A stretch of 64,000 nucleotides of DNA from Octopus bimaculoides (Eukaryota). The notes under the pieces are model-generated. The model saw only the letters and a program-made list of their open reading frames with translations, did not search any database and was not told the DNA's origin. Below, one piece after another: positions 4,066 to 62,029 of this stretch (position 1 is its first letter; the number at the start of each line of letters is the position of its first letter). The position numbers and the translations under genes were made by a program. The DNA is taken from contig NC_069004.1 in NCBI RefSeq assembly GCF_001194135.2, forward strand, positions 19,268,105 to 19,332,104, given 5' to 3'.

Positions 4066-4200
4066 TCATGACTTCTGAACTAAATGGTTGGGAGCATCGG
4101 CAAACATATACTTCAGCTTAAACGCCTCGGCCAATAACTCGCCAATTTCTTCATTCTGCCAGTGGTGAGTGGGAAGGTTTTGGAGAAACATCAGTATACC
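4066..4200 (-). CDS. TBC1D22: TBC1D22 last coding exon (GILMFLQNLPTHHWQNEEIGELLAEAFKLKYMFADAPNHLVQKS*)
   Basis: Acceptor ctctttttag, phase 0, 44 codons then TGA; matches the C-terminus of the family. Confidence 0.96.
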   Translation of the reverse strand, partial: GILMFLQNLPTHHWQNEEIGELLAEAFKLKYMFADAPNHLVQKS

Positions 4201-5465: not shown

Positions 5466-5561
5466 CTGAAAATCTTTTTCACGTTGAATATCAATGGAAA
5501 ACCGTGTAAGAAAGGCAGCACAGAGATAAAGGTGGAAATCTGCAAAACCATTTATTTCTGC
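5466..5561 (-). CDS. TBC1D22: TBC1D22 exon 11 (AEINGFADFHLYLCAAFLTRFSIDIQREKDFQ)
   Basis: aattcctag acceptor, cag|gtttgt donor, 96 nt, phase 0-0; FHLYxCAAFL motif. Confidence 0.95.
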
Positions 5562-6312: not shown

Positions 6313-6440
6313 CTGATAAGTGTCCCACAAACGAATGGTACAGCGCAAAGGAATTTCTCTCATCAGCAAGTTGTTCATCCATCGGAAGGCAAATTGGAGA
6401 AATTCTACATTGTGTTTTTCTAAATGTTTATATAATGGAA
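6313..6440 (-). CDS. TBC1D22: TBC1D22 exon 10 (VPLYKHLEKHNVEFLQFAFRWMNNLLMREIPLRCTIRLWDTYQ)
   Basis: ctgcctttcag acceptor, cag|gtaagc donor, 128 nt, phase 1-0. Confidence 0.97.
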
Positions 6441-6598: not shown

Positions 6599-6752
6599 AT
6601 CCCTGTAGTTATAGGTGCATTAGGGAACTATCCCTAAAGATTTGAACAAATGGATAGAGGAAATAAACAAAAAACCTAGTTTACGGTAGATTCAGAAAAC
6701 AGTATTATTAGGGACAGCTAGGATGGATACTTAGGAAGGTTCTTGGCATCTA
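6599..6752 (+). mobile_element. 3' remnant of an RLE-type (R2/R4-like) non-LTR retrotransposon
   Basis: Frameshifted IPVVIGALG/TIPKDLNKWIEEI...IQKTVLLGTAR/ILRKVLGI*, the typical C-terminus of restriction-like endonuclease elements. Confidence 0.65.
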
Positions 6753-6894
6753 AGGTTACTTGTTGTAGCCCAATGTTATAATTTTTTTTTTATTTCCAAC
6801 AGTCTAATCTTTGAAAGGTTTAGTCCACTTTGAACTTCTAAACTCAAACCTAAAGATAACAAAGGAGATCTACTGCAAGTCAGCACTAGAAGAA

Positions 6895-7313
6895 AAATGA
6901 CCATCTTTGGTTTCAAGACAAAAGGTGTTCTTCCATCAGGATAATGCTTGTCCACATACGGTGAGGATGACATTGCAAAGGCTGGAGCAGTTTGAATGGG
7001 AAACGATGCCCCACCCACCATATTCACCAGACATTACCCCATCTGATTATCATTTATTCCACAGTCTTCAAAATCATTTGGACGGAAAAAATATGAATTC
7101 TGTAGACAAGGTCAGAACAGTACTGGAGGAGTATTTTTCATTGTGGACAAGTGAATTTTGGAAGAGGGGCCTTGCAAGTCTACTAGACAGATGGAAGAGC
7201 ATTGTAGAAAATGAAAGACAGTATATTTTAGATTAAAAAAGAACTTGGTTTATCTTAATTTTGAAATATAAAAGAAGTATAATAAAAACCGCATTATTTA
7301 TGGGATGACCCCA
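6895..7313 (+). mobile_element. Mariner transposase C-terminal fragment with right end
   Basis: ORF 6907..7236 contains FHQDNACPH and PHPPYSPDITPSDYHLF (D34D-type); tatgggatgacc TIR-like end. Confidence 0.88.
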
Positions 7314-8042
7314 ATATATATATATATATATATATACACTGGAGTAAGCACATAAAATGTGCAACAAGGTGGAAAAAAGAGTACTCAAATACCAAAGGTA
7401 GAGTAATATGCTTTATTTAAAAGCAACAGTTATATTTCTGCTGCTTTTAAATAAAGTATATATATATATATATATATATACAATATTTTATGTTCAAATC
7501 CCACCTATAAAATCAAATACTAGGGACAATACAATCAATAATTTCAAACTTTCTTTTCTACATAGGAAACAGTTATTATTTATTATTATTATTATTATTA
7601 TTATGATTAACATCCATTGTCCATGCTGGCATGGGTTGGACTATATATATATACACACACACACACACACATATATAATATATACGATGAGAATAGAGGG
7701 ATAAATCATCCAGGCAGGTACCATACGAGCAATCAGGTATAGTCTGGGTTCAGGCCAACTGCACCAGGTAGTAATGAGCACCTAAGATTACCTGGGGCAA
7801 GCAATACCACTGTATTTCATCCAATGAGTGAATCCAGGCTGTTCCGTTGATCGGATCAACTGGAACCCTCGACGTCGTAAGCGACGGAGTGCCAACAACA
7901 ACAACAACATGTATTGCTATGATTTATAAAAAAGATATTTTAATGCATGGCTGCAGTCCATTGACTGAAAAGAATAGGTGTGGTCAGTTTATTTATAATC
8001 TAAATTCAATCCTGGTCTGCAATACTTCACTAATGTACTTAC

Positions 8043-8225
8043 CATCTATCCGTTTCACTAATTCTTTCAAAGCATTCACTTTCATCTGAATACCAGGTTG
8101 AGCAAATGTGTAGTTGTCTTGGATACCATCCAGTAATCTCGTTGTACACCAGAAACTGTCGGCTTCGATGATGTTTAATGTGTCAGCTGAGAGCTTGCTT
8201 AAGTCACAGTTCTCCACTTCTATAT
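8043..8225 (-). CDS. TBC1D22: TBC1D22 exon 9 (DIEVENCDLSKLSADTLNIIEADSFWCTTRLLDGIQDNYTFAQPGIQMKVNALKELVKRID)
   Basis: cttcctcag acceptor, g|gtaagt donor, 183 nt, phase 1-1; lies inside ORF 7993..8256. Confidence 0.97.
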
Positions 8226-10029
8226 CTGAGGAAGAAAACAGAAATAATACTACCAATTTGCAGGGTCAAAGACCAGGTTGCAGTTGTGTGCCAAAATTTT
8301 AACACCCCATGAAATAAATTTGAAGTGAATTAAAACAACTTTGTGATTTATTACTAATTCATTCATCTACCATGTAGTTGCTTCAGTGTAAAAACACAAA
8401 CTCAGACAAATCATTGGCTAAACAAGTACAATTACACACACAATGAGTTCTTTCAGTTTCCATCAACCAAATCCATTCACAAAGCTTTGCTCAGCTTGGG
8501 GTTATAGTAGAACACCTGCCCAAGGTGCCACACAGTGGGACTGATTGTGATGATAGGTATGCTTAATCAGCTGTGCAATATAGTAGTAATATAGGTCAGT
8601 TAAACAATTTGTCTATCTATATCAAATATCAATCTACCATCACACAGTTATAATCAAATTGGTGAAATGCAATGTAAAAGGTGTCTTTTGTCACATAGCA
8701 CCATCTGGTTCATGGGTACATTATTCAACTATTATTGCTCTGTAGATTGTAACATCAGTGACTAGGTTGTAAATGTACATAACAAGTGACTTTGATACTT
8801 AATAACACATCATTGTAAAATAAAATAATAATTTCCAGTACTAACACAACCACAAACAATTTGTGTGTGTGTGTGTGTGTGTATAGGGGGGGTTATAATT
8901 AACTAGGTGACAAAAGATTCTTTTACATTGCATCTAACCAATTTGATTATAACTGTATGATGGTAGATTGATATTTAATATAGATAAATGTCAGTAAAAA
9001 TATTTATTAACCATGCATGTACCTTCATAAACTGTTCAAAGTAAATTTTTTTTTTTTGAAGTCCATGTTGCNNNNNNNNNNCAATTGTCTTCCACGCACA
9101 CACACAGTTCCTTTTTTTTTTTTGAAGTCTATGTAGCATTGTGTTCACAGATTTGCACTTAAATTTGCATGTTTTTAATCAAAACCTGTTAGTTACTAAG
9201 CCAGCAACACCACCTATTCATCTTTCACATTCTCTCTCTCTCTTTATCAACAACTTTTTCTCCTCCCCTTCTCCCCTCTCTCTGTACAGATGTTGTTATG
9301 GGCAAAATGATGAAAATCAGCTTCCCTTTTATAATATAAGATTGAATCAGCCTCTCTGCTTGATTAGTATTTTATTTTTATCAACACTTACTGTCAACAT
9401 TGTACTCAGAAGTTAGACCAGTGGTTCCCAAACCATGCACTGCAAGATGTGACTAGGTGCGCCTCGAAAAAGTACGATTATATTTCAAAAATATGAAAAA
9501 TACAAACCATTGTTCACTAGAAAGTTCATATATAAATGTCTAAGAGGCAAAAAACTAAATACTAAGTTCTAACCTAAGAATGAGAGGCAGTTGTGTCATT
9601 CAATTCATTTAGGCTAATTATGGTATGACAGTGTTATTCAATTTTGAATCTGAAATTTCATAAAGATAAGAAATAAATTGGCATCAATCTATCCTTGAAA
9701 TTATCATCTTATGAACATATTCAGTGCACGACTATGTTTTAGTTTATTTCGGTTGCAGCCTCAGCAGTTTTCTACGATGTTGAGTTAAATCTTTTAATAC
9801 GTCCTCACATATTGCGACTGAATTTCAATGTTTTTCATTCATATAATGGCAAGAATGTTCGTCTTTTCAATGAATTTTGAAAGGCTTCTCAAATGAGTCC
9901 AATAATATGTAACATGCTGCCACTTTTCACAACTCCCTGGTCACTTGTCTCAGTTTGACTGTTAGTAATCTGTGTTCTTTGTGCAAGAGGATTCATTATT
10001 AACAGACTAAATTACCCATAAAATGGATA

Positions 10030-10625
10030 AGTTTGTAAAGAGAAGACGAGATACAGTTTGGGTTTGTGCCAGGGAAAAGCACCACTGATGCTATATTTCT
10101 GGTAAGACAGCTGCAGGAGAAATACCTAGCCAAAGATAAACCTCTGTACCTGGCTTTCGTTGACATGGAGAAAGTCTTTGACAGGATCTCCTGTCAACTA
10201 GGGATAGATGAGTGGTTAGTGAGAGCTGTACAAGCCATGTACAGAGATGCTGTCAGTAAGGTGAGGATTGGCAACGAGCATAGTGAAAAATTCTGGGTAG
10301 GGGTCCACCAACGATCAGTCCTCAGCCCCCTTTTATTCATCATAGTCCTCCAGGCCATAACAGAGGAATTCAAACAGGATGTCCCTGGGAGCTTCTCTAT
10401 GCTGATGACCTTGCTCTAATAACTGAGTCACTATCAGAACTAGAGAGGTTTCAGGTGTGGAAGCAAGGTCTAGAGTCTAAGGGCCTTAGAGGCAATCTAA
10501 CAAAAACCAAAGTCTTAATAAGTAGGAAGGCAGACAAATCACAAATCCCTTCAGGTAGATGGCCCTGCTCAATCTGTAGAAAAGGCGTTGGTATAAACTC
10601 CATAAAATGTACCTGGTTTAAGCTA
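10030..10625 (+). mobile_element. RTE-like LINE reverse transcriptase remnant
   Basis: GFVPGKSTTDAIFLVRQLQEKYLAKDKPLYLAFVDMEK, out-of-frame LYADDL, LESKGLRGNLTKTKVL. Confidence 0.9.
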
Positions 10626-10888
10626 ATTAAGCTATATAATCAAAGCCTTACGAGTGAATTTGGGAGATAAAAACTGTGAGAAGCCTGTTGTGTGTGTATG
10701 AGAGAGAGAGAGGTCATGGCTTCATCTTTCCATGTTCACTTTAGCCTACAAAGACATAAAACCACTTCAGAATCATCCAGACCAACTATAAAAGCATTTA
10801 CCAACCCCTGCTTTGGGGTATAAAGAAAATGCTGCAAGTAAGAAACACCAGCCCGTTCTACAAAACAACTCTATAACAAATACATTAA

Positions 10889-11105
10889 CCCTTTAGCATC
10901 CAGATTTTTCTGTCAAATACAATGCTTATTTATTTACGTTGTTTTGAATTAATCATGCATTACCTTTTTGTATTGAGATTTCAATGATGTGCTTGTTTAT
11001 ATTTAGTATGACATTGTAGGGTAGGTGTGAGAGGCTGAGTATGACCAGTCTATACATAAAACAGGTATATTTGGACCAGATATGGCTGGTTTATATGCTA
11101 AAGGG
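10889..11105. mobile_element. piggyBac-like MITE
   Basis: TTAA-ccctttagcat ... atgctaaaggg-TTAA, an 11-bp perfect TIR; related copies near 20070-20250 and 45650-45860. Confidence 0.8.
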
Positions 11106-11172
11106 TTAAAAAAAAAAAAGTGACTGATACTCGACCGACATCAGTGAAACCAGAAAAGTGGGCAATACATAC

Positions 11173-11293
11173 CATTGCTAATGTACTCAGAAAGATAGAC
11201 AACAAAAAACGGCGTTACAAGATCATTAATTCCTTGTACATAGCCACTGGCTGGATGGCGGATGGCCCATATAAACAGGATTCTTTCAAATAT
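11173..11293 (-). CDS. TBC1D22: TBC1D22 exon 8 with glutamine finger YxQ (IFERILFIWAIRHPASGYVQGINDLVTPFFVVYLSEYISN)
   Basis: cattcttttag acceptor, g|gtatgt donor, 121 nt, phase 0-1. Confidence 0.97.
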
Positions 11294-12628
11294 CTAAAAG
11301 AATGAAGAAAAAAAAAAAAGAAATTTTAGCATGTTTAAAAAAAATAACCAAAATAATAATTTTCCATATAGATACAAAGGCATCAATTTTGAAGGGAAGT
11401 GGGTAAGTCACTACTGGGGATCCCAGTACAGGACTGGTATTTCATTTTATCAATCTTAGAAGCAAAGGTGACCATGGCAGAATTTGAATTTAAAATGTAA
11501 AGTCCTAGAATGTATTTTTTTCTGATACTCTTCTGATTCTGCCAATTCATTGCCCTAATAATAACGAGGTCATTTGCCACGAGGGCAAATGATGAAAGGG
11601 ACAATACACAAACAGGCATAAAGTTTACATAAAATCATCTGAATTAAAATAAAACATAAGAATACATGGTAAATGACATTAAAAAAGATGAAGAAACTGC
11701 AATCCTCCAAATACAGGAGGACATCTAGGATCAATCGAGAAATCACATCATTAAACATTTTCCCCAAACACTAAGAACGATTGCCCTCTCCACTTGTTGT
11801 GCTCCAATTTACAGGCATGGTCTGATCCACTACCCTCATCCGCCTCTCAATAAATATTAGCAGTCTGCACCTCCCTCCCCACCTTCACCTTCCTTTTCAA
11901 GTGAAACTTTAAAAAAACCCAACCATAGATAGAGAATTTTTTTTTTTTCAACCAATCAAAAATATTCTGTGGGGGTTGCATAACTTGCTAGAAAATGTAA
12001 CCAAATCTGCAAATCACACCATCTTCAAAAAGTGAAGGATACACTAGATTATTTAACCTTAAAATATACAAGAGAGTCACTAAAGAAATTCCTTTGATCT
12101 TAGTTCTTCTTAATTAGCACTGGTCCTGGAGCTAAACGCTAACTAATTGGTGGAGCAGAATGAATCTTTCTACAAACTCCAAGTATCTTAGCATCTTAGT
12201 TCTGGCTCTCCATGTTTTTAGAGCTTACAAGTTAAACTAAAAGAAGAGACAAGTCTTCACACAGGACAGGATTACAATCTACCATTAAATAATACTGGCC
12301 ATAACTTCACCCCTCACACTTGGCAACATAATAAGGATAATACTCAGTTTTGTATGTATGTGTCAATTAGATCATTATTACCCTCATTTTAACATTCATT
12401 TTTGCATGCTGGCACAGGTCAGACAAATTTCACTGCAACAGAGTTTCTGCCACTGAATGCTCTTCCTGTCAGCTCTCACCCGTTTCCAAGCAAGTTAATA
12501 CTTCCTCTCCCACCAAGTCCTTTCAATACAAACAGCTCAATGGCCAGGCTAGGTTCAAGGAAAATTGCAAACAAATGACACCATCTTTGTATGAACAGTA
12601 ACTGTTCATACAATCAGTGCATTATGCC

Positions 12629-12690
<62 letters not shown>

Positions 12691-12699
12691 NNNNNNNNN

Positions 12700-12810
12700 N
12701 TGGGGATATTTCAGTTTCTATCTTAGATGAACAATAACCACTGTTAGCTGCAGGAGTTTCAAACAGGCCAGTTACTGAGTCACTGCAGTTCTTAAAGTGA
12801 ATGCGACAAG

Positions 12811-12844
<34 letters not shown>

Positions 12845-13224
12845 ATGCGTGCTTGCGCAGCACACAGTTTTAACAGTGGACAGGTCAGTTTCAAAGCAGC
12901 AAAAATATTTTGACACGAATTTAAATGTTGGAGTGAATTTAACGTTTTTTTTTTTTTTGTGTGTGTGTATGTGTTCTTAAGTGGCTTATAAACATCTTCC
13001 ATGCTGCAACTGTATATATATTNNNNNNNNNNTACTTGCATAGCGGGTGTCCTGGTCTGAGGTCGTATGCTGGAGCGAAAACAATTGCTGCATGGAAGGT
13101 GTTTATAAACCATTCAAGAAACACACAAGAACCGTTAGATTCACTTCAGCATTTAAATTTAAATTTACCAAAATATTTTCATCACTTTGAGACCGCAACC
13201 TGTTCACTGACAAAATTCTGTGCT

Positions 13225-13262
<38 letters not shown>

Positions 13263-13590
13263 ACATATACATATGTATACATACACACATATATATACAT
13301 ATATGTGCATATATACACATATACATATATATACATACACATATATACACACACATATACACATACACACATATATAAATAACTGCTGTGTGCACGTGTA
13401 TATTTTCCATTGGTGCAAGAAAACTGAAAAACCACTGCTTTGCAAACAAAATGTTTTGACATATTTGTTCTGCATTGAGTTACAAACACTCCCTTGTCAC
13501 TTTTACTCTAGGAACTGCAGTGAACTACTAACTGGTCCACTGGAAATTCCTGTAACCAACCAACTATTGTTCATCTAGATAGAAACTGAA
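12700..13590. repeat. About 0.9-kb imperfect foldback element
   Basis: Three nested arm pairs: 12710-12811 with 13490-13590, 12860-12945 with 13130-13225, and 12970-13015 with 13080-13125. Confidence 0.75.
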
Positions 13591-14370
13591 AGAAGCCCAT
13601 TATATATANNNNNNNNNNNNNNNNNNNNNNNNNNNNNNNNNNNNNNNNNNNNNNNNNNNNNNNNNNNATATATATATATATATATATAGATATATATGAG
13701 GATGAAGGGTCCTTCCTGAGCTACAGGCTCATAAGACTGGTTTCCCAGATCTGGTAGCATATATATTTACCCCTGGATAGGATGCTGTTCCATTACAGGA
13801 TTACTCATTTTTAGTCAGCTGAGGGGACTGGAGCAACATGAAATGAAGTATTTTGCTCAAGGATACAATGCATTGCCAGGTCCAGGAATCGAAACTACAA
13901 TCTTATGATCATGAGTGCAACACCCTAACGACTAGGCTACACAAACACACGTAATTATATAAAGAGGGTAAAAAAAGTTGTAACATCACCTGCAGGATTC
14001 AAACATTGCATCAGTTGTAAAATGTATAGTTGTACTAATCACTACAAAAACACTACATACACACACACACACACACACAATCATCATCATTGGTGTTTAA
14101 CATCTGTTTTTCCATGCTTGCATGGGTTAGACAGGTCTTCTTCAGCAAAACATCTCAACACTTGTGGCGCTTTTGTCATCTCCTTCATGAGGGTCAACAG
14201 TACCCTAAGATCACATCTAATCACCTCCTCTTGGTCTTCTTTCTACTTGGACCATTTGACCATTCTTTACCCAACTGCCATACTCCATAAGCAATACATA
14301 TCCACACCAGCAAAATCTCTTCTCTTGCACACCACAGACAATTCCTCTTACATCCAGTTTGCTCTCTCTC

Positions 14371-14401
<31 letters not shown>

Positions 14402-17400
14402 ATACTTGTGAAGAATCACTTATTCAAAAATGCTAAAATACTTCTCAGTGTTAATACTGCCTCGATCATTAATATATATATATTTTGACAAGCACACTGG
14501 CTAATTGCAACACCAGTGCCTATTCTAGCACTGACATTCTTTATATCGCTGGCAGGGAGATGAGTCACTACTATCTCCAGTCGTCAAACATCCATCATTG
14601 ATGAAACCAAAGACGGTCAGAATCCTGTAATCTGATGGTCTCTGGGGGGTGGCAAGGATTAATCTCCCCACTAGTGAGATAAACAAGAGTGCATCTGACA
14701 CTAAAAGCCAATATGAGAGGTTCTCTCATGGTATCTACCTGCAGTATAGTTTGTTCTAACAGAACATCCATATTTAAGTGGGGGATAAAAATTACCTCTT
14801 GCTAAACTGATAATTATAATGATGATAATGTCCCTGCACTGCAGGCTGCAGCTGCCTGGGTCACGCATTCATGCCCCAGTTACACTTACATGCAACCTAC
14901 TTTGCTGCATGAAGTCATCTACTGCCACCTGCTTCTGCATCTACCCTTCAATGCCTAACTCCGCACAATGGTTATAATGCTTCCTTTTACCTTGCTGGTG
15001 TGTCAGAGCCAACTGCAAACGTACATCATCTGCATTTTATACCCATGTTATGCTAATGTAGAATATCACACGTGCACATGCATTCTATGAGCAGCAGTTA
15101 GTTTATTCAGAGAAAGATGGAATCTCTGCAAGTCGGGTTAAGGGCTCATAGAACATTTTCAAATGCATCCCTATTTTAGCAATCATGTTTTCGGGACACT
15201 TATTTCCATTGCTGAACATACATATTTACATGATGGGCTTCTTCAAGGTTTCAATTAAATTTCTATTCATGATGCATTTGGTTAACCTAAGGCTACAACA
15301 AAGAACAGTAGCTCAAAGAGCCATGCAGCATGAATCAAATCTAGAACCACACGGCTGCAAAGCAAAACTTCTTAATCACAGAACCATACCTGCAATATAT
15401 TTTCATGCATTCAGACATTATGCTTTTAAGCTTCAAAGTTAGGGGCAGGTTTCTAGACTAATTTAAAACAAAGGAAGTTAGTAAAATTATATACATATTT
15501 ATATGTAATTCCATGATGCATTTCAGCTTAACCAAGATTTAGGTTAGGTTAATCGCAGGAAGGACACCCACCCACCCCACCTCCACAAAACAAGGATGCT
15601 GAAACCATGCAGTTATTTCAACCAAATAAACATGCATCCACGTGAGGCTTTACAACTGTCTAAAAAAAAACAAAAAAAATTTCCAACAAGATTCAAGACT
15701 CAGTCTCCAACCGTTTCCTTTCCAACAATCATAAACATTGGTTTCTTATTTTACCACAAAGACTATTTCGTCTAATTCGTTTAGCCTTTTCAGGCAAAAC
15801 TGACTGAGACCGCTCTTCATAGTATGACGCTATTTTCCTGTTTTAAAATTATTTAAATCAAAACTTCCCATTGAAATTTCATGTTAATTTATGGTCCAAA
15901 CCATGGCTTAATAATGACACAGTTATTTTACCAAATTCTTCATCGTGTTTTCAAAATTAATTGAAACAAAGACAATGCATTTCAACAGAAATATGACAAT
16001 AAAAAGATTAAACAGACAAGAATTCAAAATGATGCCTTTGTTACCTATTTATCAAACTACAAATGACAGCTAAGTCCCTGAGCACTAAATAGTTGTGATT
16101 AATGAATCTGGAAAGGTTTTTAACTCAGAAACATTATGTATAAAACTGGAAACCACAGAACATTTCATCTTGATCACACTGTTCCTACTATTCTTACAAA
16201 GAAACAAAGTCTTTCATTTATTGTTTATGGACATAATTGACTGTCCCTCAGTATATTACAGGTATCTAAGAGAAAAATGAAAGGCGGAAAGAAACGAGTT
16301 GGTATCAAGATTTAATAATAATGGTTTCAAATTTTGGCACAAGGCCAACAATTTTGGGGAAGTGGCTAAGTTGATTACATCAACCCCAGTGCTCAACTGG
16401 TACTTATTTTATTGGCCTCAAAAGGATGAAAGGTAAAGTTGATCATGGCCACATTTGAACTCAGAATGTTCAGAGTCAGAAGAAATGCAGCTAAGCATTT
16501 TTTTCCCCCGGAATGCTAACAATTCTGCTAGCTCGTTGCCTTAATAATAATAAAAATAATCCTTACTGCTAAAGGCACAAGGCTCGAAATTTTGGAGGAG
16601 GGGACTAGTCGATTACATTGACCCCACTGGTACCTAATTTATCGACCCCAAAAGGATGAAAGGCAAAGTCAACCAAGGAATATAAACTCAGAACATGAAG
16701 ACAAACAAAATGCTGCTAAGCCTTTTGCCCAGCATGGTAACATTTCTGCCAGCTCACTGCGTTAAATAATAACAATGATAATAATAATAATAATAGCTGA
16801 AACAGAGCCAGGGCATGTTTCTGATTGGCAAATGATCTTTCCAGAATACAACATTGGTTTCATCACAGTTCCACACAAGGTTGAGGTAGAGAGATGCAAT
16901 CTGGTACTGAAGATTAGCCACAAGGATTTAGCTCTCATGTTTTACACTGATTAAAGGCTTATGGGTTGTATTGTGTTAATGGAGATCCTAAAATCTCTCG
17001 GAGCCAATCCTTTCAGCTGTGAGGAAAGGTGATACAATTCACCATTGTCGTCAGAGGATGCAAGATATGATTAGCAACCATTTTCTAATTGGTCACAACT
17101 GTCACTATCATTGTCACCACCACCACCACCATCACCACCATCACATGATCAGGAAAGAAGCACTGAAAAGTTACACCCTTCTATCTAACCTATAAGAATG
17201 GATACCTCTATCCCACCACTCTCCTCCAATTATGGTAAAAGGAAATAGTTACCCACTGTTAATTAACACATGAAAATAGGGAAAATAAAACAAATCAGCC
17301 TAATTACCTTACTATGAGACATTTTCTTTCCTTTTATTTTATTTTTTGCTAACATATTTGATGACAATAAAAAAAAATTTACGTTAAAGCAAAATATATA

Positions 17401-20759: not shown

Positions 20760-20825
20760 TTCCTGCACGGCATTCTGCTGGAACAAGTGTGCAACAGAAG
20801 TCATTCGAGGGATATCTTTAAGAAT
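20760..20825 (-). CDS. TBC1D22: TBC1D22 exon 7b, divergent duplicate arginine-finger exon (ILKDIPRMTSVAHLFQQNAVQE)
   Basis: ccctgtttttgcag acceptor, gaa|gtgagt donor, 66 nt, phase 0-0, no stop codon; 12/22 aa identical to exon 7a and keeps DxxR. Confidence 0.88.
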
Positions 20826-22318
20826 CTGCAAAAACAGGGAGCAGGGTGTTTTTGAAGAAGACAGTAATCTACTACTAACCATCAAAGAGCTACGGTGCTA
20901 CACTCGTTGAGTAAGAGTGAAGTCAACATGGAAATGACAAACCAGACAATAACTTACAAAATTAGAAAATATTTTTGTTTTCATTTGTTTGGGAAAGAAA
21001 GGTTTGTTTGCTTGTTTTTTGTTTTTTAAGAATTTTTTTTTAAGAATTTTTTTTTATGAATATTTAAAAAAAAACAATTCATTCCTCATTTGTATATCAA
21101 CATAGGTTAAATAAATCTAAAAATCCAGACAACTGCACAAATTGCAGTGGATGCTTGCTCTTTGAAACCAGTAGCCACCAATAGAATTATAGAGCATGAC
21201 ATGGAATGATGTACAAGCTGAAGAAGTATCAGCTTATTGAGTGATAACAATGTATTTTAAAAGTTTACATCAACAAATTTAAGGACCAATTATTAGTCTT
21301 GACGAAGGATTAATTAATCATAAGCATATATAAATCACCAGTGCTAAACAGCTACATTTCCAGTATTATGCTAGCTGTAATAACATACATAAACTGTAAA
21401 ATATTTACAGCTCTGTTAATTAATACTGAAAGATGGAAAGGTGTTACCAACAGTATCAGGGGTAACGGATAATTTTTTAAAACCAAAATCTGATTGTAAG
21501 TTTAGACAAAGCCTGTCTGGTTTCTCGAAAATGTTAACTTTTCTCATATGGCCTGAAAAAAAAGACAAACACATTAGTTATTAAGAGAGAAGATACAACA
21601 AAGCCCCAGCAATGAAAAACAAAAATTAAAAAACAGAAAAAGCCAACAAAATACACCCAAATATAAATGTTAAATTGCACAGCCACCTTGATTCAAATGT
21701 AACATCTGAACTAGCAAGGGCAGGGTGCTAAGACATCCATAGTGCAGCATGCTGGGTAGGGATTAAGGGGCACAGTAGAAAAATATTTAGCTAGTTGGAC
21801 AGCAAAATGCAGCAACTTGTGTCTTTCCCTTCAACCAAATTCTACCAAAGCAACATCTTAACAACTGGGTTTTCATTTATACACAGTTTCATATTAACTT
21901 GGAAAAAAAATACACATTAAAATTAAAAACTAAAATTAAACAGGAATTTAGTAGGTCAAAATTAATGTTTTTATCATTTTACTTAAAATATTTTTGTAAG
22001 TGAATTTCCAGTGAATAGTTGTCACAACATCATTTAACATCCATTTTCCATGCTGGCATGTATTGGACAGTTTGACAGAAGCTGGCAGGCTAGAGAGCTG
22101 CACCAGGTCTCAGTCGTCCATTTTGGCATGGTTTCTACAGCTGGATGCCCTTCCTAACACCAATCACTTTACAGAGTGTGTTGCGTGCTTTATATGGCAC
22201 TAGCATGGGTACTTTTTTATGTGATGCCAGCATGCAACACTTTAGTTAAAAATAAAAATGTTCTACAACTATTTTCAGTATAGCTAATGTGGTACAAAAT
22301 GACTAAGAGATATATTTT

Positions 22319-22355
<37 letters not shown>

Positions 22356-23550
22356 CAAGAAGGGCTACGTTCTTCCCTGTAGCTAAATTACTCCAGGAAT
22401 TCTTTCTGAGTATATTCATAAATATCTGTACTTATATACACCTCAACATCATTCCAACTTTTTTTATGTCAGTAAATTCTATGTCAGCATAGGTTATGTG
22501 AATTTATTATTGAGGTTTTGTTTTACAGCAGGACAATCTTTCTGCTGCTAATCTTTAACAATTTTTAAAGTAAGGGATGCCTTATTTCACACATCTTTGA
22601 AGGTATGAAGCTGACAGATGATTTGTTGACAAGAGAAATAACAACATCACTTTTAGCTCACTTATAGTGAAAATTGTTGAGCTAAAGGAGGTGGTACTGT
22701 TGTCATCTTCCCTGAATACACACAAACACAGACAATGACATATATATCTACGCAATATGCACATACATATATTTATATATATATATATATATTGTTACAC
22801 TTAGAAATGATATGCGGTACCAGTATTTTTTACTCGAGTCAAATATAATGCACCACTCCAAATTGTTGGAGTGTCCACATAGGCAGGGTTTGGACTGGCT
22901 AGTTTCCACTAGCATTGAGTTGAAAAAGTTGTAATAATGGAGTCAAACCAAACACATCTTGCATAGTGGATGCATTTCCTATTACTTACTAAGCAGGCCT
23001 AAAGCATAAGTGTTAAATGATTTTCGAATATCACTATTTGTTTTGACACCATTATTATAACTTTTTTATATCATCATCCTTTAACATTTGTTTCCCATGC
23101 TGGCATGAGTTGGAAAGTTTGACCAGAGCTGGCAAGCAGGAGAACTGCACCCAGGTCTAGTCTGATTCAGTTTGGTTTCTATGGGTGGATACCTTTCTCA
23201 ATGCCAACCACTTTACAGTGTGCGCTGGGTGCTTTTAAGGTCGCACCAGCATGAGCGCTTTTACATGGCACCAGCTTGAGTGCTTTATACATGGCACCAG
23301 CACAGGGCTCTTGCAGGCCAATCCTATTCAGCAGAGGAAGTGGCATTAACATTTCTGCTTTGGAGGACAGGTTTTTTTGAGTGATACATCATCATCATCG
23401 TTTAACGTCCGCTTTCCATGCTAGCATGGGTTGGACGATTTGACTGAGGACTGGTGAACCAGATGGCTGCACCAGGCTCCAATCTGATCTAGCAGAGTTT
23501 CTACAGCCGGATGCCCTTCCTAACGCCAACCACTCCAAGAGTAGTGGGTG

Positions 23551-23586
<36 letters not shown>

Positions 23587-24774
23587 CATACAGAGAGAGA
23601 GAGAGAGAGAGTATGTAGATACATATATTGTTAAGTATATGCATATGTGCATGTATAGAACTGCAGAGGGTCGCAGTTCTAGGGAGTCAGAACTGGGTAA
23701 TGTTTTGTGCAACTTGGTTGATGAAAGATGAGAAGTAGTGCAGTTAATGAAAGGGAAGTTGGAATCGAACACCATTTGTTAACTGATACAGGAACCACTG
23801 TAGCAACGGTTAGAAGTATCAGATGATAATAATAATAATAATATGATGCATGTAAAAATAAAATTAACATCATCAAATATTAAGCATCAAATATTTACTA
23901 AATAACATAAATCTATTTTTAACGTGAAGGAGAGCACTTCAACATTTCAAGTAAACCTCTTCATCTGAATTAGAGATGAAATGTCTACTCACAGAAAAAT
24001 GTGCCAGCTTCGCAGAGTGAATCTTATTAAGTTTTCAAATTTACGTGATTCATTTACAAGGTTACATAAAATTCAACAGTTGCAGATAAGGCGCAGGAGT
24101 GGCTGTGTGCTAAGTAGCTTGCTTGCCAACCACATGGTTCCGGGTTCATTCCAACTGCGTGGCACCTTGGGCAAGTGTCTTTTACTATAGCTCTAAACCA
24201 CTGAGCCATGCACCTTCATATATACAAATATATATATATAGATGTTTTCGATATAGTTTGGATTCTTTGCCATCAAATTTGATGGCAGAGAATCCAAACT
24301 GGATCGAAAACATCTATATATATATATATATACATATATATATAAGAGAAAGAGAGGAAGAAAAAAGCATGATAAACACACATGATGCAGTTTACTATAC
24401 TTTTTCTAAATTTTCCTCTGTATATCATAAGTAATAACACCACTAAGTTCAGTAGTAACCATGCCACATCTCTGGCAGTTGGCTGGGTGATAGTCTATGT
24501 GGAGCCCTAAATACACATGCAGCTATTGTACATCTAACCTTGTGGGTGTGGGGGTGTATGTGTAGCATAACAAAAAGCCCTGAAATTTCAATATTTTAGT
24601 AACAAAGACACTGGATATTCAAGCTTGCTGTGTAAAGATTTAGCTGCTTTTTTTTTTATTAGTCTTTTACTAAACTATTGAACTTGCTTGTCTGCAGAAC
24701 TGGTGGATGTATGATAAAAAGGTCCCAAATTGCTGCATTTTGTTGAACTGGCTATTTATTGGGGGCATACTTAC

Positions 24775-24840
24775 TTCCTGAACTACCTTCAGTTGAAACA
24801 GAGGGACTAAAGGGTTCATTCGGGGAATGTCTATGTGAAT
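24775..24840 (-). CDS. TBC1D22: TBC1D22 exon 7a, canonical arginine-finger exon (IHIDIPRMNPLVPLFQLKVVQE)
   Basis: gttcctgattttag acceptor, gaa|gtaagt donor, 66 nt, phase 0-0; matches family IHIDIPR...PLFQ...VQE. Confidence 0.95.
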
Positions 24841-29575: not shown

Positions 29576-29704
29576 CTGTCGAAACGTATCTTGATGTTCA
29601 ACTTGATGTCGTGTCCCATAATACTGTTCAACAAAACTGAAATATTCCTTCCGCTTACGTTCTAAAGTGGGCTGTCTCCGATCATAGCTTGCAGGAAGAT
29701 AACC
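29576..29704 (-). CDS. TBC1D22: TBC1D22 exon 6 (GYLPASYDRRQPTLERKRKEYFSFVEQYYGTRHQVEHQDTFRQ)
   Basis: ttcttcttcag acceptor, cag|gtcagt donor, 129 nt, phase 0-0. Confidence 0.96.
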
Positions 29705-32422: not shown

Positions 32423-32493
32423 AGATAAAATTTTCCATGCTGTGGGTCTCACTGATTTTGGGATGCCAGACCAACTGAGTTTACGTAATTCTT
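32423..32493 (-). CDS. TBC1D22: TBC1D22 exon 5 (EELRKLSWSGIPKSVRPTAWKILS)
   Basis: ttttgttattcag acceptor, tct|gtaagt donor, 71 nt, phase 1-0; start of the TBC domain. Confidence 0.96.
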
Positions 32494-33046: not shown

Positions 33047-33745
33047 CAGGGCTTGGACAAAATAATGGAAACACCTTAAAATTTCAAACAAATTTATTTT
33101 AATATGGGGTAGGACTGCCTTTGGCAGTAATTACAGCTTGAATTCTATGAGATATGGACTCATACAAAGTTTGAATTGTTTCCAAAGGAATTTTTGTCCA
33201 CTCTTCAGCTAAAACAGTCTCCAGTTCTTGTAGTTATGATGGTGGAGGATATAGACTCCTTACTTGTTTTTCTAAAATGTACCATAAATGTTCAATAATC
33301 TTGAGATCTGGGGAATGTGGTGGCCAGATAAGATGTTCAACTTCACTAGAATGTTCCTCGTGCCATTCAGTAATAACTTTAGCTGTGTGAATTGATGCAT
33401 TATCATCCTGAAAGATTGTGTTTCCTTCTAGAAACAGTTTCCCAACCATAGGATGTATTTGATCAGATACAATGCTTAAATAGTCCTGACTATTAATTCT
33501 GCCATGAAGGGAAACCATTGGGCCAGCGGATTTCCAAGATATAGCCTCCCAGATCATCACAGATCCTCCTCCATGTTTAACAGTTGGAAGAAGGCAGTCT
33601 GGGTCAAATGCTTCTTTTGGCTGTCTCCACATGTATACTCGGCCGGTGGTCAGAAATATGGTAAACCTTCTTCCACTGCTCTAGGGACCAATTTTATTAA
33701 ATCTTCACAACTGTCCAACAAATGGAAATGTGAAACTGAGTAACA
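33047..33745 (-). mobile_element. Tc1-like transposon, truncated
   Basis: TA-cagggcttggacaaaataatggaaacacc TIR; ORF 33234..33632 has KHGGGSVMIW, FQDDNASIH and WPPHSPDLKIIEHLW (DDE). Confidence 0.9.
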
Positions 33746-34773: not shown

Positions 34774-34965
34774 CTAAATCTGCATTTGATGATGTTAGTA
34801 AAGTGTGAAATTTTTCTAGTTTAGCAGATTCCCGATCTGGTACTGATGGCTGACCAAATCGCAAAGGCGTAATTCTAGGAGGCTGCCAGTGACTGTTGAG
34901 ACGCACACCTACACCCGGTCCAGCACCTAAAGAAATAGCTGACGGAATTGCAGTCATGTGACATC
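34774..34965 (-). CDS. TBC1D22: TBC1D22 exon 4 (GCHMTAIPSAISLGAGPGVGVRLNSHWQPPRITPLRFGQPSVPDRESAKLEKFHTLLTSSNADL)
   Basis: tttctttcccacag acceptor, ttag|gtgaga donor, 192 nt, phase 1-1; the RExxKLEKF motif matches the family. Confidence 0.92.
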
Positions 34966-35224: not shown

Positions 35225-35430
35225 CTGTGGTAACTGTTGAATGCAAAGCTGATTGCAGTACGTGTTGACTGCAAAGCTGACAGTGGTACCCATTGACTGC
35301 AATGTCGACTGTGGTACTTGTTAACCGCAAAACTGACTGCAGTACCTGTTACTGGTGGTATCTGTTGAGTGTGGTACCTGTCGACTGCAATGTTGACTAT
35401 GGTACCTGTTGACAGCAAAATTGACTGTCC
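35225..35430. repeat. Degenerate tandem repeat with a unit of about 28 bp (tgactgcaaagctgactgcagtacctgt)
   Basis: About 7 recurring gactgc / ggtacctgt units. Confidence 0.6.
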
Positions 35431-35760
35431 AGCTTCTTTACCAGGCCAATTTGTTTCAGATGATCTAATACAGTCGGAATCAAAACATCAAACCTTGCAG
35501 CTAACTCACGTGTAGTTTGAGATGTATCCGCTTTCACTCCAGTTTCAATTTCATCATTATCCACCTTGGTCTCAGGTCTACCACGGGGCTGATTTTCAAG
35601 AGTAAAGTCACCAGACCGGAACTTCTCAAACAATCGACGTACAATGCACTCATTCGCCACATCTTCACCAAACACCTCATTGATGTTTCAAGCTGTTTAA
35701 GATGCATTGGTTCCACGATGGAACTCATATTCATAAACAATTTGAATTTTTTATCCATCC
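35420..35760 (-). mobile_element. Mariner transposase N-terminal (HTH) fragment
   Basis: FGEDVANECIVRRLFEKFRSGDFTLENQPRGRPETKVDNDE...TTRELAARFDV...LKQIGLVKKLD. Confidence 0.85.
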
Positions 35761-36155: not shown

Positions 36156-37355
36156 TCAGGTCATTCCATAAGTTCTGTCCGAATTTTGAATAAAGAAAAC
36201 AAGTGATCAAATGTTATATTTAATTGAAATTTAATCATCAATGTACTTTCCCTGATTATCTATGACTTCTTTCCATCTATTTACAAGCTTTTTAATCCCA
36301 TCAATGTAAAATTCTTTTGGTTTCAAAACGAAGAACTCTGAAATGTCAGTTTCGACCTCCTCCTAGCTTGCGAAAGTTATGTCCCCCAAATGATTCTGTA
36401 AACTACGAAACAAATGGTAGTCTGAAGGGGCAAGGTCGGGAGAATAAGATGGGTGAGGAATTTTTNNNNNNNNNNGTCTTATTTTTCTTCAAAGCTTGGT
36501 TCAAACGCTCTAATTGCTGACAGTAGACTTGAGCATTGATTGTTGCATTAGGTGGTAAGAATTCAAAGTGAATTACTCCTTTGCAATCTCACCAGATTGA
36601 GAGAAGAACCTTTTTCCCATGAAGTTCCCTTCTCGGTTGTGGTTGAGCTTTTTCCCTTTTACCAAGCCACTGTTTATGACATTTAACATTTCGATAGAAG
36701 ATCCATTTTTCATCACAAGTCACAAGTCTATCCAAAAAGGGTGAAATGAGTTCGCGAGAATGGAGAGAAGAGCAGATGTCGACTCGCAATTTGCAGCTGC
36801 TTTCAGACAGTTCATAAGGCACCCATTTTCCAATTTTAGGAATCTTTCCAAGTTGTGGAAGATAATGATGAACAGTTGTATGGTTTGAACTAAGCTTTAT
36901 TGCCAATTCTTTAACTGATAATGCAAGATTTTCTTCAATTAATGCCTCAAGGAGCTTATCATCAAACTCAACTGGACATCCTGTTCGATCTTCATCTTCA
37001 AGGCTGAAATCTCCACTTCTAAAATTTTACAAACCATCTCCTGCAAGTTCTTTCATTCAAGCATTCTTTCCCATAAGCTGAGTGTATATTTCGAGACACT
37101 TTGGCTGCAGAGTTTCCTTTTTTGTACTCATAAAGCATTATGTGCCTCAAATGCTTTTTGGATACTTCCATGTTAGAAAGGATTTTAATCAAAGAAATTT
37201 TAATTCTACTATTCTGTAAAATAATATTCAATTAGTTCAAATGTACACAAATGCATAAAAATAATTTTTAATTCCATTAGACATTCTAAAATACTATTAA
37301 ATTTCATTCAATTTTAAAAAAGGTAAAATCAGACAGAACTTATGGGATGACCTGA
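36156..37355 (-). mobile_element. Full-length mariner element with decayed transposase
   Basis: TIRs tcaggtcattccataagttctgtc / gacagaacttatgggatgacctga with TA at 36154-55 and 37356-57. ORF pieces: HIMLYEYKKG, WVPYEL, LVTCDEKWIFY, HPSYSPDLAPSDYHLF, GIKKLVNRWKEVIDNQGKY. Confidence 0.92.
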
Positions 37356-37478: not shown

Positions 37479-37723
37479 CTGATGGGGATTTAACTGGAGA
37501 TCCCTGTGAGGTACCATTAAGGGCTTGAAACTGTTTACTGTGATTGTCAAGTACAGCACGTGCAGTCGACTGGACATCCTTTAAGGACATTTGAACAGTG
37601 GCCATCAATATTAGATCATCATCGCCATCATCCCAAGCATCTGATGTCTCATTTTCAAAGTCCTGGAAGGCGTCCTTTGACTTGTTTTTTAGCTTGTCAT
37701 CTTTCTTTGGTGTTCCTGGGTTA
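37479..37723 (-). CDS. TBC1D22: TBC1D22 exon 3 (NPGTPKKDDKLKNKSKDAFQDFENETSDAWDDGDDDLILMATVQMSLKDVQSTARAVLDNHSKQFQALNGTSQGSPVKSPS)
   Basis: tttcctaatttag acceptor, tcag|gttggt donor, 245 nt, phase 2-1; TSDAWD and VLxNHSK motifs. Confidence 0.93.
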
Positions 37724-50153: not shown

Positions 50154-50207
50154 CTGATAGGTCGTTCAATACGTGGTGGGTGTTGTGCGCCATAAACTGG
50201 CTTGATA
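50154..50207 (-). CDS. TBC1D22: TBC1D22 exon 2 (IKPVYGAQHPPRIERPI)
   Basis: cgcttttttag acceptor, ag|gtatgt donor, 54 nt, phase 2-2; PVYGAQHPP is family-conserved. Confidence 0.94.
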
Positions 50208-62009: not shown

Positions 62010-62029
62010 CGTGTCCGAGTCGGTTCCAT
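62010..62029 (-). CDS. TBC1D22: Candidate (alternative) first coding exon, MEPTRT(R)
   Basis: Strong donor acg|gtaaga. ATG at 62029 is preceded by an in-frame TAA, and the phase 2 end joins exon 2. No homology to the usual FWK..PGS first exon. Confidence 0.45.

What the first reader, a model, noticed from the sequence alone, without database searches (positions are those of the whole stretch)
20760..24840. Duplicated, probably mutually exclusive exons encoding the catalytic arginine finger of the Rab GAP TBC1D22
Seen: two 66-nt phase 0-0 exons lie between exons 6 and 8, each with good AG/GT sites and an identical CAGGAA|GT end. Exon 7a encodes IHIDIPRMNPLVPLFQLKVVQE and exon 7b encodes ILKDIPRMTSVAHLFQQNAVQE (12/22 aa identical). 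Several conserved residues use different synonymous codons (GAC/GAT, ATT/ATC, CCC/CCT, TTT/TTC, CAA/CAG), and the flanking introns show no similarity I could see. That fits an old duplication kept under selection rather than a recent copy. Established: TBC GAPs use a dual-finger mechanism, with Arg from IxxDxxR and Gln from YxQ (here GYVQ in exon 8); vertebrate TBC1D22A/B carry IHIDIPR. Inference: alternative use swaps the active-site helix and following loop while keeping D and R, giving two GAP isoforms that may differ in Rab specificity or kinetics from one gene. I do not recall this being described for TBC1D22, but I cannot search.
Basis: partly seen in the sequence, partly recalled or inferred. 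Interest (0 to 1): 0.88.

Follow-up and report, generated by a model that had tools for sequence, protein, structure and literature searches.

The report
Alternative arginine-finger exons in octopus TBC1D22
The octopus gene for the Golgi Rab-switch-off enzyme TBC1D22 carries two alternative 66-base copies of the exon that holds its catalytic arginine; the pair is real, is expressed, dates back at least to the common ancestor of octopuses, snails and bivalves, and is already in RefSeq as isoforms although no paper I could find describes it.

Summary
On the minus strand, exon 7a (24775-24840, IHIDIPRMNPLVPLFQLKVVQE) and exon 7b (20760-20825, ILKDIPRMTSVAHLFQQNAVQE) are both 66 nt and phase 0-0, with AG/GT splice sites. 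They lie between exon 6 and exon 8 of the Octopus bimaculoides TBC1D22 (Gyp1) orthologue.

- **Already annotated.** RefSeq lists a 7b isoform (X1, X3) and a 7a isoform (X2).
- **Expressed.** RNA-seq contigs from a second cephalopod differ only inside this 66-nt block.
- **Ancient.** The b-type exon (ILKDIPRMTSLAHLFQ...) is nearly invariant across bivalves, gastropods and cephalopods. Related I-x-K-D-x-x-R-M exons sit next to the canonical exon in a brachiopod, two nemerteans and two annelids.
- **b is the usual form.** Every mollusc transcript-assembly protein I opened outside cephalopods is b-type.
- **Not strictly exclusive.** RefSeq and other gene models also include both-exon and neither-exon forms, and including both exons keeps the reading frame. 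I found no mechanism that would enforce exclusivity.
- **Function untested.** Whether the two isoforms differ in Rab specificity or kinetics is unknown.
- **Novelty.** This is a new, deeply conserved member of a known kind: homologous alternative exons produced by tandem exon duplication.

The parts
24775..24840 (-). Exon 7a (a-type, canonical): IHIDIPRMNPLVPLFQLKVVQE. 66 nt, phase 0-0. Carries the IxxDxxR arginine finger.
   Evidence: Used in RefSeq O. bimaculoides isoform X2 (P0242).
20760..20825 (-). Exon 7b (b-type, derived): ILKDIPRMTSVAHLFQQNAVQE. 66 nt, phase 0-0. Keeps the catalytic D and R.
   Evidence: Used in RefSeq isoforms X1 and X3 (P0121, P0245). Orthologous exons occur across molluscs.
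20826..24774 (-). 3,949-nt intron between 7a and 7b. Contains SINE-like repeats and microsatellites. No similarity between the flanks of the two exons.
   Evidence: It is 2,512 nt in O. sinensis, 503 nt in Crassostrea and 400 nt in Saccostrea.
29576..29704 (-). Exon 6 (GYLPASYDRR...HQDTFRQ), phase 0-0. Its donor is joined to either 7a or 7b.
11173..11293 (-). Exon 8 (IFERILFIWAIRHPASGYVQGINDLV...). Carries the YxQ glutamine finger.
32423..32493 (-). Exon 5 (ELRKLSWSGIPKSVRPTAWKILS), the start of the TBC domain.
8043..8225 (-). Exon 9.
6313..6440 (-). Exon 10.
5466..5561 (-). Exon 11.
4066..4200 (-). Exon 12, with the stop codon.
34774..34965 (-). Exon 4.
37479..37723 (-). Exon 3.
50154..50207 (-). 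Exon 2 (IKPVYGAQHPPRIERPI).
62010..62029 (-). Coding part of the alternative first exon (MEPTRTR) used by isoform X3. Exon 1 of X1 and X2 lies outside the window.
   Evidence: The same type of N-terminus is found in the second cephalopod.

Best explanation
**Shown.** The window holds most of the Octopus bimaculoides orthologue of TBC1D22/Gyp1, a Golgi TBC-domain Rab GTPase-activating protein. The exon that encodes the IxxDxxR arginine-finger segment, the loop after it and the first turn of the next helix exists as two tandem 66-nt copies. These are 7a (canonical a-type) followed by 7b (derived b-type). Both are spliced into mRNA, usually one per transcript. Both keep the catalytic Asp and Arg, and both fit the TBC fold. 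The pair arose by tandem exon duplication before cephalopods, gastropods and bivalves diverged. Both copies have stayed under purifying selection since.

**Likely.** The duplication is older still. It is probably shared with brachiopods, nemerteans and annelids, which carry an I-x-K-D-x-x-R-M exon beside the canonical one. In molluscs b is the default isoform and a is the minority or regulated one.

**Inferred, not tested.** The swap changes 10 of 22 residues: H-I becomes L-K just before the catalytic Asp, and the loop changes from NPLVP to TSVAH, losing both prolines. These residues lie next to the active site. The two isoforms are therefore expected to differ in Rab substrate preference, catalytic rate or regulation. 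One gene would then supply two GAP variants.

**How the choice is made.** Reading frame does not decide it, because 66+66 nt stays in frame. A too-short intervening intron does not decide it either, since that intron is 0.4-3.9 kb in molluscs. All sites are ordinary GT-AG, so splice-site type is not the cause. The choice must rest on regulated splice-site competition or RNA structure, neither of which I could identify. The choice is probably leaky.
For: **Identity of the gene**
- The model is 100% identical to RefSeq 'TBC1 domain family member 22B isoform X1 [Octopus bimaculoides]'.
- Pfam RabGAP-TBC scores 153.2 bits (7b isoform) and 152.4 bits (7a isoform).
- It matches human TBC1D22B (6D0S) at E 2.3e-146, and also 2QFZ, 1FKM and 2G77.
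- AlphaFold models of both isoforms match 2QFZ with TM 0.86-0.88.

**Use in mRNA**
- O. bimaculoides: X1 and X3 carry 7b, X2 carries 7a. O. sinensis: X2 carries 7b, X3 carries 7a. O. vulgaris has one model of each.
- Six RNA-seq contigs from a second cephalopod have an unbroken 490-aa coding sequence. They differ from one another only at 20 nt inside the 66-nt block, apart from one extra substitution in one contig. Five are b-type and one is a-type.

**Age and selection**
- Both exons are 66/66 nt identical between the two Octopus genomes, against 88-93% in the introns.
- Octopus versus oyster: 7b has 10 synonymous-only and 3 amino-acid-changing codons; 7a has 7 and 4.
- The a and b exons lie in the same order and are the same size in oysters.
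- a/b isoform pairs are annotated in Pecten, Mizuhopecten, three Haliotis species, Mercenaria, Ruditapes, Aplysia, Mytilus and Magallana.
- Among distinct mollusc sequences, a-type exons average 83% identity to each other and b-type exons 80%, but a versus b only 53%.
- Outside molluscs, the order is a then b in Lingula, Tubulanus and Capitella, and b then a in Owenia. Lineus has isoforms of each type, with the order not determined.

**b as the usual form**
- 21 of 21 informative Logan/ENA proteins in the five transcript-only mollusc clusters I opened are b-type. So are the scallop (8 contigs) and two mussel Logan members.
- In the second cephalopod, b-type proteins come from 11 contigs and the a-type from 1.
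Against: - I had no junction read counts for O. bimaculoides itself. A 62-aa exon6|7b|exon8 peptide search found no Octopus fragment.
- Gene models with both exons in tandem exist for O. sinensis X1 and X4, Crassostrea, Magallana, Mytilus coruscus, Aplysia, Tubulanus, Nucella and Candidula. Models with neither exon exist for O. vulgaris, Mercenaria X3 and Aplysia X4. Exclusivity is therefore not strict, or those models are artefacts; I cannot tell which.
- No enforcing mechanism was found. RNA duplex searches between the conserved oyster intron blocks gave nothing beyond z = -2.
- Nothing here measures GAP activity or Rab binding.
- The AlphaFold models have only moderate confidence over the exon 7 segment (10-residue block means of pLDDT about 60-87 over and around the segment).
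- Homology of b exons across phyla rests on about 8 shared positions and exon order. Owenia has the reverse order, a chiton has no b exon, and one transcript-derived hit of unidentified origin has IQKD on an otherwise a-type exon (P0195). The K signature could therefore be convergent.
Confidence: 0.8

Rival explanations
1. The two exons are independent cassette exons rather than a mutually exclusive pair. Transcripts with both, either or neither are all produced in meaningful amounts. The both-in and both-out forms would be inactive or regulatory variants: a duplicated finger, or a GAP with no arginine finger.
For: - Including both or skipping both keeps the reading frame, because each exon is 66 nt.
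- Models with a+b and with neither exon are annotated in several species.
- The intervening introns of 118 nt (Capitella) and 0.4-3.9 kb (molluscs) do not sterically prevent double inclusion.
- No docking or selector RNA structure was found.
Against: - None of the roughly 35 transcript-assembly-derived proteins I inspected carries both exons or neither.
- Tandem inclusion would insert a second IxxDxxR helix and loop into a conserved helical core.
- Many of the a+b entries are not RNA-supported RefSeq variants. They are 'hypothetical' or 'unnamed' products, for example Nucella, Candidula and Mytilus coruscus.
Confidence: 0.15
2. Both isoforms are made but are biochemically equivalent. The pair is kept because expression has been divided between them, for example through different splicing regulators in different tissues, and not because the proteins differ in Rab specificity or rate.
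For: - The catalytic D and R and the end of the segment (VQE) are retained in both exons.
- Both score the same against Pfam.
- Both models fit the same fold.
Against: The b-specific residues (L-K, TSLAH) are nearly invariant across bivalves, gastropods and cephalopods. They are consistently different from the equally conserved a-specific residues (H-I, NPLIP). That pattern points to selection on the amino-acid differences themselves.
Confidence: 0.2
3. 7b is a decaying pseudo-exon or an assembly artefact next to the N gap, picked up only by ab initio gene prediction.
For: A 206-N gap lies 97 nt from 7b.
Against: - The same exon, 66/66 nt identical, sits at the same place in the independent O. 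sinensis assembly.
- It is present in spliced RNA-seq contigs of another cephalopod.
- It is orthologous across molluscs, with mostly synonymous change.
Confidence: 0.01

Closest known systems
TBC1D22A / TBC1D22B (vertebrates) and Gyp1p (yeast): Golgi TBC-domain Rab GAPs using the dual-finger mechanism
   Same: - The TBC domain is about 70% identical to human TBC1D22B.
- The IxxDxxR and YxQ fingers are present.
- The models match the fold of 2QFZ, 6D0S, 1FKM and 2G77.
- Exon 7a matches the canonical IHIDIPR(M/T)NP(L/H)(I/V)PL(F/Y)Q segment that is conserved from yeast to human.
   Different: - The octopus gene, like other lophotrochozoan genes, also offers a second finger exon (ILKDIPRMTSVAH...) that is absent from the solved proteins.
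- Vertebrates have two paralogous genes. Molluscs have one gene with two finger exons.
Homologous mutually exclusive exon pairs from tandem exon duplication, such as ATE1 7a/7b, sodium-channel SCNalpha 5a/5b and OGDH 4a/4b (PMC7797038, PMC12772994, PMC7969005; human survey PMC5740500)
   Same: - The two exons are adjacent, of equal length and equal phase, and are sequence homologues.
- Transcripts usually carry one of the two.
- The pair is deeply conserved.
- The swapped segment lies in a functional site.
   Different: - In those cases an enforcing mechanism is known, either competing RNA structures or distant branch points. None was found here.
- Frame-preserving both-exon and neither-exon models are annotated here.
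- TBC1D22 is not listed in the supplements of the human MXE surveys I could search.
The alternative finger exon pair of vertebrate TBC1D22A (gar and teleosts)
   Same: - It is the same exon of the same gene family, in two alternative versions: IHIDIPRMSPE(S/A)LILQPKVTE and IHIDIPRTNPLIPLFQQASVQE.
- Single-exon, both-exon and neither-exon isoforms are annotated (gar X1-X4; Tachysurus).
   Different: - The derived exon lies upstream of the canonical one.
- It keeps IHIDIPRM and diverges only in the loop, and it is 63 nt long.
- It is probably an independent duplication.
- I did not see whether tetrapods keep both versions. Only the derived type appeared in the reptile and mammal TBC1D22A hits.
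NF1 exon 23a, an alternative exon inside a GAP catalytic domain (PMC12352984)
   Same: Alternative splicing alters the catalytic domain of a small-GTPase GAP.
   Different: NF1 exon 23a is a cassette insertion in a RasGAP domain. It is not a homologous swap of the arginine-finger segment.

Membership tests
TBC1D22/Gyp1 subfamily of TBC-domain Rab GAPs | RabGAP-TBC domain detectable by profile | tested here: met
   Pfam PF00566 scores 153.2 bits (7b isoform) and 152.4 bits (7a isoform), against a cut-off of 25.2.
TBC1D22/Gyp1 subfamily of TBC-domain Rab GAPs | Arginine finger in IxxDxxR and glutamine finger in YxQ | tested here: met
   IHIDIPR in 7a, ILKDIPR in 7b and GYVQ in exon 8.
TBC1D22/Gyp1 subfamily of TBC-domain Rab GAPs | Closest solved relatives are TBC1D22A/B and Gyp1, with the same fold | tested here: met
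   Sequence search: 6D0S E 2.3e-146, 2QFZ 3.4e-141, 1FKM and 2G77 about 1e-85. Foldseek TM 0.79-0.88 for both isoform models.
TBC1D22/Gyp1 subfamily of TBC-domain Rab GAPs | GAP activity on Rab33/Rab1-type Rabs | not testable with these tools
   This needs recombinant protein and GTPase assays.
Homologous mutually exclusive exons (MXE) from tandem exon duplication | Adjacent exons of the same length and phase with significant sequence similarity | tested here: met
   66 and 66 nt, phase 0-0, 12/22 aa and 65% nt identical. The exon block is the only similarity between the two regions (E 6.5e-5).
Homologous mutually exclusive exons (MXE) from tandem exon duplication | Both exons expressed, each in transcripts that lack the other | tested here: met
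   RefSeq X1/X3 versus X2. Spliced RNA-seq contigs of a second cephalopod differ only in this block.
Homologous mutually exclusive exons (MXE) from tandem exon duplication | Exactly one of the two in (nearly) every mature transcript | tested here: inconclusive
   No transcript-assembly protein has both or neither. However, a+b and neither-exon gene models are annotated in O. sinensis, O. vulgaris, oysters, Aplysia and Mercenaria. Read counts were not available.
Homologous mutually exclusive exons (MXE) from tandem exon duplication | A mechanism that enforces exclusivity (frame/NMD, steric intron, U2/U12 incompatibility, competing RNA structure) | tested here: not met
   Double inclusion stays in frame. 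The intervening intron is 3,949 nt in octopus and 400-503 nt in oysters. All sites are GT-AG with U2-type consensus. No significant conserved duplex was found. RNA structure or trans-acting factors remain possible.

The most novel reading that the evidence does not exclude
The arginine-finger exon of TBC1D22 may have been kept as an alternatively spliced pair since before molluscs, brachiopods, nemerteans and annelids diverged. It may also have been duplicated again independently in vertebrate TBC1D22A. On this reading the derived cassette (I-x-K-D-x-x-R-M...) is the default in molluscs and redirects or retunes the GAP towards a different Rab. A single gene would then encode two Golgi Rab GAPs that differ at the catalytic site. 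That would be a splicing switch placed directly on a GAP's arginine-finger segment.
Probability: 0.3. Interest if true: 0.7.

Novelty: new member of a known kind. Interest (0 to 1): 0.5.

Why it matters
- **A natural experiment on Rab specificity.** What makes a TBC GAP choose its Rab is poorly understood. Here evolution has kept, for hundreds of millions of years, two versions of the 22 residues around the arginine finger in an otherwise identical protein. Comparing the two isoforms on a Rab panel would test directly whether this segment and loop contribute to substrate choice or rate.
- **A caution for annotation.** In molluscs the textbook IHIDIPR form seems to be the minor one.
- **Probable mis-joined database entries.** Many entries that carry both exons in tandem, or neither, may be wrong models.
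- **A candidate unannotated exon.** At least one genome, Capitella, appears to have a b exon missing from the one protein model I had for it.

Tried and rejected
1. **Junction-peptide search.** A 62-aa exon6|7b|exon8 peptide search, meant to catch short Octopus RNA-seq fragments, returned no cephalopod and no b-type fragment.
2. **Competing RNA structures.**
   - Only exons, about 35 nt of their flanks and one microexon are conserved between the Crassostrea and Saccostrea introns.
   - Duplex folding between those blocks gave nothing beyond z = -2 in either species (an earlier attempt timed out).
   - The O. bimaculoides and O. sinensis introns are too similar (88-93%) for footprinting.
3. **Octopus microexon.** I looked for an octopus counterpart of the oyster 21-nt microexon and found no candidate.
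4. **Species of the second cephalopod.** A search for its SRR run numbers in papers returned nothing.
5. **Literature.**
   - No paper combines TBC1D22 with mutually exclusive exons or exon duplication in this sense.
   - TBC1D22 is not in the held supplements of two human MXE surveys.
   - Rak et al. 2000 was not held.
6. **Contig look-ups.** Look-ups of non-longest isoforms found nothing on record, so I used the longest isoforms instead.
7. **Pseudo-exon or assembly artefact.** Considered and rejected on the O. sinensis, transcript and cross-mollusc evidence.
8. **AlphaFold secondary structure.** The models differ around IxxDxxR: in the b model the helix runs through the motif, while in the a model the motif is coil after a shorter helix. 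I do not interpret this, because confidence there is only moderate.
Full report
**What is in the window.**

The gene lies on the minus strand. Reverse-complementing the two ends of the reported interval gives two 66-nt open segments with canonical splice sites:
- Exon 7a, 24775-24840: ttcctgattttag|ATT CAC ATA GAC ... CAG GAA|gtaagt, encoding IHIDIPRMNPLVPLFQLKVVQE.
- Exon 7b, 20760-20825: cctgtttttgcag|ATT CTT AAA GAT ... CAG GAA|gtgagt, encoding ILKDIPRMTSVAHLFQQNAVQE.

The neighbouring exons fit. Exon 6 (29576-29704) ends ...HQDTFRQ in phase 0. Exon 8 (11173-11293) begins IFERILFIWAIRHPASGYVQ in phase 0. I mapped exons 2-12 and an alternative first exon inside the window. Exon 1 of the long isoforms lies beyond the window.

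At nucleotide level the exons are 65% identical.

The two regions share only the exon block, at 69% over 87 nt and E 6.5e-5. A scan of the entire exon 6 to exon 8 interval for AG|I..D..R...|GT finds exactly these two exons. The N gap 97 nt downstream of 7b corresponds to about 225 nt of plain intron in O. sinensis.

**What the gene is.**

A spliced model using 7b is 100% identical over 308 residues to RefSeq 'TBC1 domain family member 22B isoform X1 [Octopus bimaculoides]'. The window therefore comes from that species.
- Both isoforms hit Pfam RabGAP-TBC equally, at 153.2 and 152.4 bits.
- The nearest solved structures are human TBC1D22B (6D0S), TBC1D22A (2QFZ) and yeast Gyp1 (1FKM, and 2G77 with Rab33).
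- AlphaFold models of a 7b isoform and a 7a isoform both superpose on 2QFZ with TM 0.86-0.88.
- In the models, exon 7 supplies the IxxDxxR arginine-finger segment, the loop that follows it and the first turn of the next helix. The glutamine finger (YxQ) comes one helix later, from exon 8.
- The dual-finger mechanism is established for Gyp1-Rab33 (reviewed in PMC5902221).

**Are both exons used?**

The isoforms are already annotated:

| Species | 7b | 7a | both | neither |
|---|---|---|---|---|
| O. bimaculoides | X1 XP_014783420.1; X3 (other N-terminus) | X2 XP_014783421.1 | – | – |
| O. sinensis | X2 | X3 | X1, X4 | – |
| O. vulgaris | one model | one model | – | one model |

There is independent transcript evidence from a second cephalopod. 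Its protein is 82% identical over its full length and shares the X3-type N-terminus. The species is unknown.
- Five RNA-seq contigs from different runs carry ILKDIPRMASIAHLFQQTGVQE, and one carries IHIDIPRMNPLVPLFQLKVVQE.
- Their 1,473-nt coding sequences differ only at 20 positions, all inside the 66-nt block, apart from one extra substitution in one contig.
- That is a clean exon swap in mature mRNA.

**Age and selection.**
- Both exons are 66/66 nt identical between O. bimaculoides and O. sinensis, while the collinear introns are 88-93% identical. At about 8% divergence, zero changes in 132 nt has a chance of roughly 1 in 60,000 (my arithmetic).
- Against the second cephalopod, 7a shows 6 synonymous and 0 replacement codon changes. 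7b shows 3 synonymous and 4 replacement changes.
- Against an oyster (Crassostrea angulata), 7b shows 10 synonymous-only and 3 replacement codons. 7a shows 7 and 4.
- Orthologous exons are closer (a-a 79%, b-b 73% nt) than the paralogous exons within a species (62-67%).
- Oysters have the same layout: a then b, 66 nt each, with 503 nt (Crassostrea) or 400 nt (Saccostrea) between them.
- The b-type peptide ILKDIPRMTSLAHLFQ... is almost invariant across bivalves, gastropods and cephalopods.
- a/b isoform pairs are annotated in Magallana, Mytilus, Pecten, Mizuhopecten, three Haliotis species, Mercenaria, Ruditapes and Aplysia.
- A chiton (Liolophura) has only the a exon, with introns too short to hide another.

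**Beyond molluscs.**

A second finger exon with the signature I-x-K-D-x-x-R-M sits beside the canonical exon in several other phyla:

| Species | Phylum | Order | b-type exon |
|---|---|---|---|
| Lingula | Brachiopoda | a then b | 66 nt, IQKDCNRMVNVLELTREKTVQE |
| Tubulanus | Nemertea | a then b | 57 nt, IQKDLCRMTLLTNRPKASE |
| Lineus | Nemertea | order not determined (isoforms only) | 57 nt, IQKDLCRMSVLTNRRPIEE |
| Capitella | Annelida | a then b, 118 nt apart | 63 nt, IGKDVPRMSQIPILHQPIVQS; absent from the protein model I had |
| Owenia | Annelida | b then a | 60 nt, IEKDINRMERFIAENSWVSQ |

- A trematode protein carries IQKDLTRMTLLYRHPDMLA, which is very like the nemertean exon.
- A single origin early in Lophotrochozoa is plausible. 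It is not proven, because the shared signal is short, Owenia has the reverse order, and one transcript-derived sequence of unidentified origin has IQKD on an otherwise a-type exon (P0195).
- Vertebrate TBC1D22A has its own pair: the derived MSPE(S/A)LILQPKVTE upstream of the canonical TNPLIPLFQQASVQE. Gar isoforms X1-X4 cover both, each alone and neither. This looks like a separate duplication of the same exon.

**Which isoform is usual?**
- In the five transcript-only (Logan/ENA) mollusc clusters I opened, 21 of 21 informative proteins are b-type. So are the scallop Logan protein (8 contigs) and two mussel Logan proteins.
- In the second cephalopod, b-type proteins come from 11 contigs and the a-type from 1.
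- Assemblers tend to keep the dominant path. b is therefore probably the major form and the canonical a exon the minor or regulated one.
- This evidence is suggestive, not quantitative.

**Is the pair mutually exclusive?**

The predominant pattern is one exon per transcript, but I cannot call it strict.
- Double inclusion or double skipping keeps the reading frame.
- The intervening intron is long enough for both exons to be spliced in.
- All splice sites are ordinary GT-AG.
- Gene models with both exons, or with neither, exist in several species.
- No transcript-assembly protein shows either of those forms.
- I searched for competing RNA structures among the few conserved oyster intron blocks and found nothing convincing.

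**How it most likely works.**
- Shown: two catalytically plausible isoforms differ only in the 22 residues around the arginine finger.
- The a-specific residues (H-I before the Asp; the NP-L-I/V-P loop, which is conserved from yeast Gyp1 to human) and the b-specific residues (L-K; T-S-L-A-H, with no prolines) are each conserved within their type.
- That argues for selection on the differences themselves.
- Inferred: because this segment borders the catalytic groove, the swap tunes Rab recognition, rate or regulation.
- No tool here could test this.

**Novelty.**
- The isoforms are in RefSeq, so the bare fact is not new to databases.
- I found no paper that describes it. A TCGA-based paper lists an unspecified 'ME' event in human TBC1D22A.
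- It is a new, unusually deep member of a well-known class. Its distinguishing feature is that the swapped piece carries the catalytic arginine of a Rab GAP.

Noticed in passing
L008:4715-4735 (Crassostrea angulata); L012:17114-17134 (Saccostrea cucullata): A conserved 21-nt, phase 0-0 microexon (QQLGLGT / QHLGLGT) lies between exon 6 and exon 7a in oysters. Its flanks are 89% identical between the two genera. It inserts 7 residues directly before the IxxDxxR motif, in b-type and in a+b gene models. Scallops have GLGLGA/T at the same place. I found no counterpart in the octopus intron.
   Followed up: partly
L014:3383-3445 (Capitella teleta): A candidate 63-nt b-type exon, IGKDVPRMSQIPILHQPIVQS, lies 118 nt downstream of the canonical exon. 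It has a good polypyrimidine tract with AG, and a gtatgt donor. It is not in the protein model I had (P0180), and its expression was not checked.
   Followed up: partly
L010:20594-20653 and 24441-24506 (Owenia fusiformis): In this annelid the b-type exon (IEKDINRMERFIAENSWVSQ, 60 nt) lies upstream of the canonical exon. Every other lophotrochozoan I examined has the opposite order. This points to an independent duplication or a rearrangement.
   Followed up: no
Proteins P0264-P0268 (Lepisosteus oculatus TBC1D22A X1-X4), P0015 (Tachysurus): Vertebrate TBC1D22A has its own alternative pair at the same exon: IHIDIPRMSPE(S/A)LILQPKVTE upstream of IHIDIPRTNPLIPLFQQASVQE. Isoforms with both, either and neither are annotated. 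The reptile and mammal TBC1D22A hits showed only the derived type. A TCGA SpliceSeq 'ME' event is listed for human TBC1D22A (PMC12886300), but the exons involved are not stated.
   Followed up: partly
L011:6808-7832 (Liolophura sinensis, chiton): Only the canonical exon is present. The flanking introns (about 600 and 358 nt) contain no b-type exon in any frame. The b exon was either lost in this chiton or arose after chitons split from the other molluscs.
   Followed up: yes
window 62010-62029 (-): An alternative first coding exon, MEPTRTR, is used by RefSeq isoform X3. The second cephalopod's transcripts start with the similar METTRAR, so this alternative start is also conserved.
   Followed up: partly
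window 33234-33632 (-), 36589-36906 (-), 37019-37231 (-), 35397-35675 (-): Remnants of Tc1/mariner transposases sit in the introns. Pfam hits are DDE_3 at 1.2e-12, Transposase_1 at 1.1e-07, Mos1 HTH_48 at 3e-19, and a weak IS630-type HTH. SINE-like repeats and microsatellites fill much of the introns around 7a and 7b.
   Followed up: partly
L013 (Lingula anatina), about 1180-3030 versus 3651-5506, and 5827-10370 versus 10758-15500: Blocks of exons of the Lingula gene occur twice in the assembly, with near-identical sequence. One MetaClust protein (P0250, 902 aa) concatenates two copies. This is probably an assembly duplication rather than biology.
   Followed up: no
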